This document shows, piece by piece, positions 45,552-45,766 of a stretch of 64,000 bases of DNA. The translations under genes were made by a program, and so were the position numbers. Each line of letters starts with the position of its first letter. Position 1 is the first letter of the stretch. A model generated the notes under the pieces. The model was not told the DNA's origin. It made no database searches and worked only from the letters and a program-made list of their open reading frames with translations. The stretch is from Saccharolobus solfataricus P2 (GTDB taxonomy: Archaea; Thermoproteota; Thermoprotei_A; Sulfolobales; Sulfolobaceae), in the NCBI RefSeq assembly GCF_000007005.1, contig NC_002754.1; one strand, 5' to 3'.

Positions 45552-45725
45552 TTGGTTAGAGTAATCACTTTTAAAGCAGAGGAGGAGCTTTTGATAAAAC
45601 TGGATCTCTTTGCATTAAATAATAGAATGAGCAGAAGTGAAGTAATTAGAATGGCTATAGAAAAATATTTAGAAGAAGCCGCCGGCGGGATTCGAACCCG
45701 CGACCGCCGGCTATCTAGGCAGTAA
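45552..45725 (+). CDS. Ribbon-helix-helix transcription factor (57 aa, aCcr1/CopG-like); absent from the ORF track; 3' end overlaps antisense tRNA-Thr
   Basis: Manual translation MVRVITFKAEEELLIKLDLFALNNRMSRSEVIRMAIEKYLEEAAGGIRTRDRRLSRQ*; GAGG SD 5' of the TTG; classic RHH strand-helix-SRSE..R.AI pattern. Confidence 0.85.
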   Translation: MVRVITFKAEEELLIKLDLFALNNRMSRSEVIRMAIEKYLEEAAGGIRTRDRRLSRQ

Positions 45726-45766
45726 CTTACAAGGCCGGCGCTCTAACCAGGCTGAGCTACGGCGGC
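45677..45766 (-). tRNA. tRNA-Thr(UGU) with a 15-nt intron at 37/38 (45727-45713)
   Basis: Acceptor GCCGCCG/CGGCGGC+U73, anticodon arm CCGGC-CTTGTAA-GCCGG once AGTTACTGCCTAGAT is removed, TTCGAAT T-loop, relaxed BHB; TATA-like CTTTAAAT 45800-793. Confidence 0.93.

What the first reader, a model, noticed from the sequence alone, without database searches (positions are those of the whole stretch)
45552..45766. An RHH gene reads through the 3' half of an antisense tRNA and stops inside the tRNA intron
The last 16 residues (EAAGGIRTRDRRLSRQ) and the stop are the reverse complement of tRNA-Thr acceptor/T-arm/intron sequence (49-nt overlap). The TAA at 45723-25 is supplied by the intron, so intron loss would extend the protein. 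The mRNA is a perfect antisense to pre-tRNA, and convergent transcription could couple the two. Alternatively it is a scar of an element integrated at tRNA-Thr, but no integrase or duplicated att site is visible.
Basis: partly seen in the sequence, partly recalled or inferred. Interest (0 to 1): 0.75.

Follow-up and report, generated by a model that had tools for sequence, protein, structure and literature searches.

The report
Cell-cycle repressor gene ending inside tRNA-Thr
The small gene is the orthologue of aCcr2, a known cell-cycle repressor of Sulfolobales (reported undeletable), and its last 15 codons and stop codon are written on the opposite strand of a tRNA-Thr gene, a tail-to-tail arrangement conserved across most of the order and not mentioned in the aCcr paper texts I could read.

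Summary
ORF 45552-45725 (+, TTG start, 57 aa) overlaps by 49 nt an intron-bearing tRNA-Thr(UGU) at 45766-45677 (-). Its TAA lies in the antisense of the 15-nt intron.

The ORF is the orthologue of aCcr2, not a stray RHH gene. It is 53/57 identical to S. islandicus REY15A ADX85224.1, with an identical tail. That protein's residues fit the published aCcr2 (SiRe_1157) numbering: Arg3, Thr6, Lys8, Ser24, Thr49.

In every lineage sampled from seven other genera, the RHH core ends at or within a few bases of the 3' end of tRNA-Thr(UGU). The overlap is 0-1, 19, 48-49, 68 or at least 88 nt. Only Acidianus has lost it.

Most relatives stop at a TGA made by A57 of the T-loop (45-48 aa). This window and S. 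islandicus have G57, so TGA becomes CGA and reading runs ten more codons to the intron.

The tail is predicted disordered and is dictated by the tRNA. It shifts predicted pI from 5.3 to 10.0 and carries Thr49, a reported in-vitro aCcrK phosphosite.

An integration scar is not supported. Regulatory coupling by convergent transcription is untested. The gene is known; the overlap is a new detail. Interest is moderate.

The parts
45552..45725 (+). aCcr2 orthologue (RHH transcription repressor), 57 aa, TTG start, TAA stop
   Evidence: ORF list. Pfam RHH_1 27.8 bits. NCBIfam NF053762 aCcr1-family model 71.8 bits, cutoff 60. 53/57 identical to S. islandicus REY15A ADX85224.1, whose residues fit the published aCcr2 numbering. 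The start aligns with ATG in relatives.
45552..45677 (+). RHH core, residues 1-42 (beta strand, helix 11-23, helix 28-43); ends exactly at the tRNA 3' end
   Evidence: AF2 model: pLDDT 87/95/94/91 for residues 1-40. The NCBIfam profile covers residues 3-40.
45677..45725 (+). Overlap: tail AAGGIRTRDRRLSRQ plus stop, written on the antisense of the tRNA acceptor 3' strand, T-arm, variable loop, anticodon-stem 3' strand and intron
   Evidence: Codon-to-tRNA map. pLDDT falls to 63 and then 48. The tail raises predicted pI from 5.3 to 10.0.
45677..45766 (-). tRNA-Thr(UGU) gene with intron, 90 nt, no encoded CCA
   Evidence: Rfam 62.7 bits. ARAGORN -i: tgt, intron (40,15). Compensatory changes in acceptor pairs 4:69 and 6:67 and in the T stem among 10 orthologues.
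45713..45727 (-). 15-nt intron AGUUACUGCCUAGAU after nt 37; a relaxed bulge-helix-bulge fold is possible
   Evidence: A manual hBHBh' pairing (one U-U mismatch in the central helix) evaluates to -4.7 kcal/mol but is not the MFE. An intron at this site, about 12-20 nt, is present in the 13 other orthologous tRNAs examined.
45723..45725 (+). TAA stop of aCcr2, complement of intron nt 3-5
45693..45695 (+). Codon 48, CGA (Arg). Its C is the complement of T-loop G57. Relatives with A57 read TGA here and end at 45-48 aa
   Evidence: Window and L036 have T-loop TTCGAAT. L001, L005, L006, L014, L056 have TTCAAAT and L015 has TTCAAGT; all six end at TGA.
45696..45698 (+). Codon 49, ACC (Thr49), complement of T-stem G52, G53 and T54. 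Thr49 is one of two residues of S. islandicus aCcr2 phosphorylated in vitro by aCcrK
   Evidence: Map. PMC13199686, read.
45661..45665 (-). First T5 run downstream of the tRNA 3' end on the minus strand: candidate terminator of the tRNA transcript, inside aCcr2 codons 37-39 (inference)
   Evidence: Read from the sequence. The run is shorter or absent in relatives.
45792..45799 (-). TTTAAATC, candidate TATA box of tRNA-Thr about 30 nt upstream of its 5' end (inference)
   Evidence: Sequence. A TTTAAA/TTAAAG-like element at the same distance is present in the relatives' flanks.
45827..45831 (+). First T5 run on the + strand after the aCcr2 stop, preceded by a predicted hairpin: candidate end of the aCcr2 mRNA. 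That would make its 3' UTR antisense to the whole tRNA and its promoter (inference)
   Evidence: Sequence. Fold of 45660-45835 (+): mirror cloverleaf, then a hairpin, then U5.

Best explanation
The ORF is the orthologue of aCcr2, an RHH repressor of the Sulfolobales cell-cycle network. [quoted passage not shown] Since before the sampled genera diverged, its gene has sat tail-to-tail against tRNA-Thr(UGU), with essentially no spacer. The RHH core (about 42 residues) ends at the tRNA's discriminator base. Some lineages keep a stop codon exactly at the junction. Wherever that stop is missing, translation runs into the antisense tRNA until the tRNA happens to supply a stop. In most genera that stop is a TGA made by A57 of the T-loop, giving 45-48 aa. 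In the S. islandicus/this-window clade the T-loop has G57, so the codon is CGA and the ribosome reads ten more codons to a TAA in the intron antisense, giving 57 aa. The tail sequence is therefore set by tRNA constraints, not by protein constraints. It is disordered and Arg-rich. It is most likely a tolerated appendage, possibly adding non-specific DNA affinity and a minor phosphosite (Thr49), rather than a device that couples the two genes. Shown here: gene identity by orthology, the geometry, the order-wide conservation, and the G57/A57 toggle. Taken from papers: the repressor function, protein expression, the failed deletion, and Thr49 phosphorylation in vitro. Inferred: that the tail is translated in vivo in this organism, that it is near-neutral, and where the transcripts end.
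For: Identity: NCBIfam aCcr family 71.8 bits versus cutoff 60. The 90%-identity cluster mate is ADX85224.1 of S. islandicus REY15A with the same tail. PMC13199686 gives aCcr2 (SiRe_1157) Arg3, Thr6, Lys8, Ser24 and Thr49, all of which fit that sequence. The aCcr1 numbering (R2, K7, Y23, R27, M38, L43) fits the other paralogue group. Synteny sufB-sufD-aCcr2-tRNA-Thr holds in Saccharolobus, S. acidocaldarius, Sulfurisphaera and Sulfodiicoccus. Overlap census: 0-1 nt in S. acidocaldarius, Ca. Aramenus and one MAG; 19 nt in Saccharolobus caldissimus-type, Metallosphaera (two species), Stygiolobus and Sulfurisphaera; 48-49 nt in the window, S. islandicus and L009; 68 nt in L040; the whole tRNA in Sulfodiicoccus. 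Three different reading frames are used, which argues against selection on the tail peptide. tRNA exons are 81-100% identical to the window, against 57-91% for the RHH core, and the tRNA shows compensatory stem changes. AF2 gives a confident core and a low-confidence tail. Acidianus has an inverted tRNA block and a 41-42 aa protein with its own stop, so the overlap is dispensable.
Against: No transcript or native-protein data for this locus were available, so translation of the tail in vivo is inferred. The antibody and in-vitro MS data in PMC13199686 use recombinant protein made from the annotated ORF. Conservation of a zero-spacer junction across an order could itself reflect selection for coupling. 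The tail changes predicted pI by almost 5 units and carries a residue phosphorylated in vitro, whose phosphomimetic T49D slightly lowers DNA binding (PMC13199686), so 'near-neutral' may understate its role in this clade.
Confidence: 0.7

Rival explanations
1. Regulatory coupling. Convergent transcription and sense-antisense pairing between the highly transcribed tRNA-Thr gene and the aCcr2 mRNA tune aCcr2 levels, or the mirror-cloverleaf at the mRNA 3' end stabilises it. This would link a master repressor to tRNA expression, and the zero-spacer junction would be kept by selection.
For: The junction is conserved in lineages from eight genera, counting the window's. Neither gene has room for its own terminator outside the other: the first T5 after the tRNA lies in aCcr2 codons 37-39, and the first T5 after the aCcr2 stop lies beyond the tRNA promoter. 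The + strand folds into a stable mirror cloverleaf, z = -2.9.
Against: Acidianus species separate the genes. The candidate tRNA terminator tract is not conserved: T5 here, T4 or T3 or none in relatives. aCcr2 is reported as constitutively expressed through the cell cycle (PMC13199686). The whole block sufB-sufD-aCcr2-tRNA is syntenic, so simple inertia explains the adjacency. No transcript data were available.
Confidence: 0.15
2. Adaptive tail. In the S. islandicus/solfataricus-type clade the G57 state is kept because the ten extra residues (RTRDRRLSRQ) give aCcr2 a basic, phosphorylatable tail that changes DNA binding or its regulation.
For: Predicted pI 5.3 becomes 10.0. Thr49 is phosphorylated by aCcrK in vitro, and T49D slightly reduces DNA binding and weakens the over-expression phenotype (PMC13199686). 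The tail is identical in the window and REY15A.
Against: Identity of the tail is fully explained by 100% identity of the tRNA and intron. Both purines are normal at tRNA position 57 (general tRNA knowledge). Sister Saccharolobus lineages have the 47-aa form. Similarity of the tail to the C-terminal motifs of other family members is not above composition-matched shuffles: top-10 mean reached by 56 of 300 shuffles, the single best score by 7 of 300. The S24E switch, not T49D, abolishes binding (PMC13199686).
Confidence: 0.2
3. Integration scar. The RHH ORF is the remnant of a virus or plasmid integrated at tRNA-Thr, like the int(N) piece of an SSV-type integrase that reads into the att copy of a tRNA 3' half. 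A weaker version: the ancestor of aCcr2 was captured from a virus at this tRNA.
For: aCcr-family RHH genes are common in Sulfolobales viruses and plasmids: 73 virus records hit. ORFs reading antisense into tRNA 3' halves are the hallmark of SSV-type integration, and real examples were seen nearby in relatives: tRNA-Arg in S. acidocaldarius L054 and tRNA-Gln in M. yellowstonensis.
Against: There is no second copy of the tRNA 3' half in the window, even with 3 mismatches. tblastn with three SSV-type integrase pieces found no integrase, and the ORF has no SSV1_ORF_D-335 Pfam hit. Both flanks are core genes in conserved order. The junction is order-wide. No Sulfolobales virus in IMG/VR or INPHARED carries this tRNA segment. 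The closest viral homologue covering the tail (SMV1) has a tail unlike tRNA antisense. An ancient capture cannot be excluded but cannot be tested here either.
Confidence: 0.05

Closest known systems
aCcr2 of Saccharolobus islandicus REY15A (SiRe_1157; ADX85224.1; LAL14/1 SiL_RS14755; S. acidocaldarius Saci_1391)
   Same: 57 aa, 53/57 identical, identical tail EAAGGIRTRDRRLSRQ, TTG start, same tRNA and intron (100% identical), same flanking sufD and RNR genes. Arg3, Thr6, Lys8 and Thr49 are present.
   Different: Residue 24 is Asn here, not Ser. Ser24 is the in-vitro aCcrK site whose phosphomimetic abolishes DNA binding in S. islandicus (PMC13199686), so that switch, if real in vivo, cannot work the same way here.
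aCcr1 (SiRe_0197 / SiL_0190), the founding member of the family
   Same: Same RHH fold and family; the NCBIfam aCcr1-family model hits both. Binds the aCcr-box and represses cdvA (PMC9976878, PMC13199686).
   Different: aCcr1 is 58 aa with its own tail (...VPVAKVEKIRL), is cyclically expressed, and in 20 loci examined has no tRNA abutting it. The window gene is not aCcr1, despite the model's name.
Partitioned SSV-type integrase genes, int(N)/int(C), at archaeal tRNA genes
   Same: A protein-coding frame reads antisense through the 3' half of a tRNA gene.
   Different: No integrase homology, no att duplication, no partner fragment. It is a host core gene, conserved in position across an order.
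Convergent gene pairs with overlapping 3' ends in compact archaeal genomes
   Same: Tail-to-tail genes that share their 3' ends, so each transcript is antisense to the other.
   Different: Here the partner is a structured, highly constrained tRNA that supplies coding sequence and the stop codon. One tRNA base (57) toggles protein length.

Membership tests
aCcr family of RHH cell-cycle regulators (NCBIfam NF053762; Pfam RHH_1) | Sequence match above the curated cutoffs | tested here: met
   NF053762: 71.8 bits versus cutoff 60, residues 3-40. PF01402: 27.8 bits versus 20.5.
aCcr family of RHH cell-cycle regulators (NCBIfam NF053762; Pfam RHH_1) | Ribbon-helix-helix fold of about 40 residues | tested here: met
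   AF2 model: helices 11-23 and 28-43, pLDDT above 90 over residues 11-40. The N-terminal strand is not assigned in the monomer model.
aCcr2 orthologous group (SiRe_1157) | Closest characterised paralogue, with matching residue numbering | tested here: met
   Same 90%-identity cluster as ADX85224.1. Arg3, Thr6, Lys8, Ser24 and Thr49 of the paper fit that sequence. The locus-tag link ADX85224.1 = SiRe_1157 is inferred from this fit and was not read from a record.
aCcr2 orthologous group (SiRe_1157) | Conserved genomic context | tested here: met
   sufB-sufD upstream and tRNA-Thr(UGU) downstream in Saccharolobus, S. acidocaldarius, Sulfurisphaera and Sulfodiicoccus.
aCcr2 orthologous group (SiRe_1157) | Ser24 phospho-switch | tested here: not met
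   The window has Asn24. Many orthologues also lack Ser at this position, so it is not a family-defining residue.
aCcr2 orthologous group (SiRe_1157) | Binds the aCcr-box, represses cdvA and other promoters, essential | not testable with these tools
   Known only from S. islandicus experiments (PMC13199686).
Archaeal intron-containing tRNA | Cloverleaf, anticodon, intron after nt 37 | tested here: met
   Rfam 62.7 bits. ARAGORN -i: Thr(tgt), 15-nt intron. Covariation in the stems.
Archaeal intron-containing tRNA | Bulge-helix-bulge splice motif | tested here: inconclusive
   A relaxed hBHBh' with a U-U mismatch can be drawn (-4.7 kcal/mol) but is not the MFE.
SSV-type integration scar, int(N) at a tRNA | Integrase homology of the ORF, or an integrase fragment nearby | tested here: not met
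   No SSV1_ORF_D-335 hit. tblastn with three integrase pieces hits only the antisense of tRNA-Gln.
SSV-type integration scar, int(N) at a tRNA | Direct repeat of the tRNA 3' half (att) bounding an element | tested here: not met
   A single copy in 64 kb, allowing up to 3 mismatches.

The most novel reading that the evidence does not exclude
The order-wide, zero-spacer, tail-to-tail junction is kept by selection. Transcription of tRNA-Thr(UGU) into the aCcr2 gene, together with the pairing or mirror-cloverleaf structure of the aCcr2 mRNA 3' end, would set the level of the constitutive master repressor of the cell cycle. That would tie cell-cycle licensing to tRNA expression, that is, to growth capacity.
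Probability: 0.12. Interest if true: 0.75.

Novelty: new member of a known kind. Interest (0 to 1): 0.42.

Why it matters
aCcr2 is central to the current model of how Sulfolobales, the archaeal cell-cycle model organisms, license cell-cycle genes.

Three practical points follow.

1. The chromosomal aCcr2 ORF cannot be deleted, tagged at its C-terminus or mutated in residues 43-57 without damaging tRNA-Thr(UGU). 'Could not be deleted' and transposon-based essentiality calls for aCcr2 are therefore confounded, unless the tRNA was spared or supplied in trans. I could not see the deletion design.

2. Thr49, one of the two in-vitro aCcrK sites, exists only in the clade whose tRNA has G57. It is absent from the 41-48 aa orthologues, so it cannot be part of a conserved regulatory mechanism.

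3. Annotation pipelines may miss or truncate this gene. It was added to LAL14/1 only at reannotation (PMC9976892). The NCBIfam model named aCcr1 also hits aCcr2 above its cutoff.

More generally, this is a clean natural example of a single tRNA base toggling the length and charge of an overlapping protein.

Tried and rejected
1. I first took the gene for aCcr1, from the NCBIfam model name and a guessed locus tag. The residue numbering in PMC9976878 (R2, K7, Y23, R27, M38, L43) does not fit it. The aCcr2 numbering in PMC13199686 does. Corrected.

2. Scan of IMG/VR for the tRNA-Thr 3' half next to an RHH gene: 11 hits, all tRNAs in high-GC (57-67% GC) contigs, so presumably bacterial phages, with no RHH gene beside them; none from a Sulfolobales virus.

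3. blastn of the junction against phage and archaeal-virus records: only a weak tRNA-Lys match.

4. Idea that the tail mimics the basic C-terminal motif of other family members (...IRTKRLVIY and similar). The top-10 mean score is reached by 56 of 300 composition-matched shuffles and the best single score by 7 of 300. Not supported.

5. The SMV1 homologue aligned over residues 2-56, but its tail is unrelated to tRNA antisense.

6. The bacterial promoter/terminator scan is not applicable to archaea.

7. P0065 and P0168 looked like orthologues but sit in virus- or plasmid-like contexts without the tRNA.

8. Supplementary files of the three aCcr papers are not held, so I could not check whether a supplementary synteny figure shows the tRNA.

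Full report
**1. What is in the sequence**

The + strand carries an ORF at 45552-45725 (TTG start, 57 aa). The minus strand carries a tRNA at 45766-45677. Rfam RF00005 scores it at 62.7 bits. The default ARAGORN run had missed it.

The two genes share 49 nt. These are the third base of codon 42, codons 43-57 (AAGGIRTRDRRLSRQ) and the TAA. The TAA is the complement of intron nt 3-5.

Removing the intron in silico lengthens the protein only from 57 to 59 aa (...RRLTRPAL, stop in the D-arm antisense). The other two frames entering the antisense tRNA would stop after 42 nt and 95 nt. A long run-on is thus what a GC-rich tRNA gives to any frame that enters it.

**2. What the ORF is**

Pfam gives RHH_1. 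NCBIfam gives the 'aCcr1 family cell cycle regulator' model at 71.8 bits against a cutoff of 60, covering residues 3-40.

The ORF's only mate in its 90%-identity cluster is ADX85224.1 of Saccharolobus islandicus REY15A. That protein is 57 aa, 53/57 identical, and has the identical tail.

I first assumed this was aCcr1, which was wrong. The aCcr1 paper numbers R2, K7, Y23, R27, M38 and L43 in a 58-aa protein (PMC9976878). That fits the other paralogue group I recovered (MRVVTFK...VPVAKVEKIRL).

The 2026 paper on aCcr2 (SiRe_1157, SiL_RS14755, orthologue Saci_1391) numbers Arg3, Thr6, Lys8, Ser24 and Thr49 (PMC13199686). All five fit ADX85224.1. The window gene is therefore the aCcr2 orthologue.

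According to that paper, aCcr2 has these properties:
- It could not be deleted.
- It binds the cdvA promoter and many others.
- It is phosphorylated in vitro by the cyclic kinase aCcrK on Ser24 and Thr49. S24E abolishes DNA binding; T49D reduces it slightly.

In the window, residue 24 is Asn. Thr49 is present.

**3. The overlap is ancient and order-wide**

I fetched orthologous loci in three ways: by exact protein look-up, by a genome scan, and by two protein searches. I annotated tRNAs with intron-aware ARAGORN.

In every lineage except Acidianus, the RHH core (...KYLEE or equivalent) ends at or within a few bases of the 3' end of an antisense tRNA-Thr(UGU).

| Overlap | Lineages | Protein length | Where translation stops |
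|---|---|---|---|
| 0-1 nt | S. acidocaldarius (the Saci_1391-type protein, the one with Thr5); Ca. Aramenus; one Sulfolobales MAG | 43 aa; 42 aa | Own stop codon at the junction |
| 19 nt | Saccharolobus caldissimus-type and a Saccharolobus MAG; Metallosphaera yellowstonensis and M. javensis; Stygiolobus; Sulfurisphaera tokodaii | 47; 45; 48; 48 aa | TGA in the T-loop antisense |
| 48-49 nt | The window; S. islandicus; MAG L009 (a different frame, tail PPTGLEPATTGSLA) | 57; 57; 55 aa | TAA or TAG in the intron antisense |
| 68 nt | L040 (a third frame) | 63 aa | TGA in the D-arm antisense |
| Whole tRNA | Sulfodiicoccus acidiphilus | 73 aa | 12 nt beyond the tRNA 5' end |

The genes upstream are sufB and sufD wherever the contig reaches.

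Acidianus species have a 41-42 aa protein with its own stop. A same-strand tRNA-Met lies about 40 nt downstream. In the A. copahuensis locus, tRNA-Thr(UGU) also sits on the same strand about 390 nt downstream; the A. hospitalis contig ends before that point. This is consistent with an inversion of the two-tRNA block.

**4. What sets the length here**

In the shared frame, codon 48 is the complement of T-loop nt 56-58.
- Relatives with A57 (loop TTCAAAT, or TTCAAGT in Stygiolobus) read ATT TGA, or ACT TGA in Stygiolobus, and stop.
- The window and S. islandicus have G57 (TTCGAAT). They read ATT CGA ACC... and continue to the intron TAA.

Both purines are normal at tRNA position 57 (general tRNA knowledge). 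One tRNA base therefore toggles a 47-aa against a 57-aa protein. The predicted pI changes from 5.3 to 10.0.

**5. Which partner is constrained**

Against the window, the tRNA exons are 81-100% identical, the RHH-core DNA is 57-91% identical and the introns are 47-65% identical. REY15A is 100% identical for both the tRNA and the intron.

The tRNA alignment shows compensatory changes in acceptor pairs 4:69 and 6:67 and in the T stem. Three different reading frames are used among lineages.

An AlphaFold2 model built on 106 homologues has pLDDT of 87, 95, 94 and 91 for residues 1-40, then 63 and 48 for the tail. Helices are at 11-23 and 28-43.

The tail therefore follows the tRNA and is predicted to be disordered. 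Its resemblance to the basic C-terminal motifs of other family members is not above composition-matched shuffles.

**6. Integration scar?**

This is not supported, for the following reasons:
- The tRNA 3' half occurs once in the 64 kb, even allowing 3 mismatches.
- There is no SSV-type integrase. The only tblastn hit is the antisense of the neighbouring tRNA-Gln.
- The neighbours are core genes: sufC/B/D, class II ribonucleotide reductase, gatD/E, nop5, fibrillarin, trm1 and tfb.
- No Sulfolobales virus carries this tRNA segment.
- The SMV1 homologue's tail is unrelated to tRNA antisense.

Real integration scars were seen in relatives and look different. One is an SSV1 D-335 N-terminal fragment reading into tRNA-Arg in S. 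acidocaldarius. Another is a set of SSV-type integrase pieces at tRNA-Gln in M. yellowstonensis.

**7. Coupling?**

The geometry forces the transcripts to overlap, or forces termination inside the partner gene.
- The first T5 after the tRNA lies in aCcr2 codons 37-39 (45661-65, minus strand).
- The first T5 after the aCcr2 stop is at 45827-31, beyond the tRNA's TATA-like TTTAAATC (45792-99).
- The + strand folds as a mirror cloverleaf followed by a hairpin and U5.

These are inferences from sequence alone. Three points count against a required coupling. The tRNA-side T tract is not conserved. Acidianus has uncoupled the genes. aCcr2 is reported to be constitutively expressed. I rate coupling at about 0.15.

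**8. Comparison with what is known**

The gene is known and its function is characterised in a sister species. The main texts of the three aCcr papers contain no mention of a tRNA overlap. Their supplements were not available. Searches for Saci_1391 and for the phrase 'overlaps the tRNA' with Sulfolobus found nothing relevant.

The overlap therefore appears to be an unremarked property of a known gene. It belongs to the known kind 'convergent overlapping genes'. It resembles SSV int(N) fragments in form only.

**9. Consequences**

- Any chromosomal deletion, C-terminal tag or mutation in residues 43-57 of aCcr2 also hits tRNA-Thr(UGU). Reported essentiality is therefore confounded unless the tRNA was protected. 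I could not see the construct design.
- Thr49 exists only where the tRNA has G57, so it cannot be a conserved switch.
- Ser24 is Asn in this window.

**Verdict**

This is a known gene with a new, moderately interesting structural detail. Interest 0.42.

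Noticed in passing
window 42061-42808: sufC is split into two overlapping ORFs in different frames: 42061-42549 matches SufC profile positions 1-148, and 42482-42808 matches positions 146-242. The break is near 42490-42500, in the ABC signature region (GFS.GGEKKR). Relatives have an intact 248-aa SufC. This is either a frameshift mutation or a sequencing error in a gene expected to be essential.
   Followed up: partly
window 45937-46011 (tRNA-Gln CUG); L001 3492-4674; L002 3867-6144; L003 4496-6144: The DNA downstream of the neighbouring tRNA-Gln differs between strains that share an identical aCcr2 protein. 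It is RNR directly (window), about 1.2 kb of extra AT-rich DNA and then RNR (L001), a 1069-aa Prim-Pol gene (L002), or MFS transporter genes (L003). tRNA-Gln, not tRNA-Thr, looks like the local integration or rearrangement hot spot.
   Followed up: partly
L006 and L007 (Metallosphaera yellowstonensis MK1, same scaffold, 13.9 kb apart): A 646-bp, 100% identical repeat carries the tRNA-Gln 3' part, aCcr2 and tRNA-Thr. A second 637-bp alignment (99.5% identical) encodes SSV-type integrase sequence that reads into the tRNA-Gln 3' half. The order of the two repeats differs between the copies, and an N-run lies beside one copy. This is either an integrated element that duplicated the aCcr2-tRNA block or a scaffolding artefact.
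   Followed up: partly
L054 3490-3756 (S. acidocaldarius): An 88-aa SSV1 D-335-type integrase N-terminal fragment reads antisense into tRNA-Arg(TCG), 1.3 kb from the aCcr2-tRNA-Thr junction. It is a textbook int(N) scar and served as a contrast to the aCcr2 case.
   Followed up: partly
window 45552-45725; NCBIfam NF053762: The NCBIfam model named 'aCcr1 family', typed as an equivalog, scores the aCcr2 orthologue above its cutoff. Automatic naming will blur the paralogues. Default ARAGORN also misses the intron-bearing tRNA-Thr, which may be why this overlap goes unnoticed.
   Followed up: yes
L008, L010 (Acidianus); L023 (Desulfurococcales MAG); L033 (Aeropyrum MAG): RHH homologues in these loci are followed 39-50 nt downstream by a same-strand, intron-containing tRNA (Met, Met, Met, Ser). 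This is a second kind of close RHH-tRNA adjacency that I did not pursue.
   Followed up: no
L039 2939-4174 (Sulfodiicoccus acidiphilus): An IS605 OrfB/TnpB-like gene sits about 230 nt beyond the tRNA-Thr 5' end. The annotated 73-aa aCcr2 ORF swallows that tRNA entirely.
   Followed up: no
window 41043-42044: A 333-aa protein with an N-terminal AbrB/MazE-type (SpoVT-AbrB) domain lies just upstream of sufC. It has no NCBIfam match.
   Followed up: no
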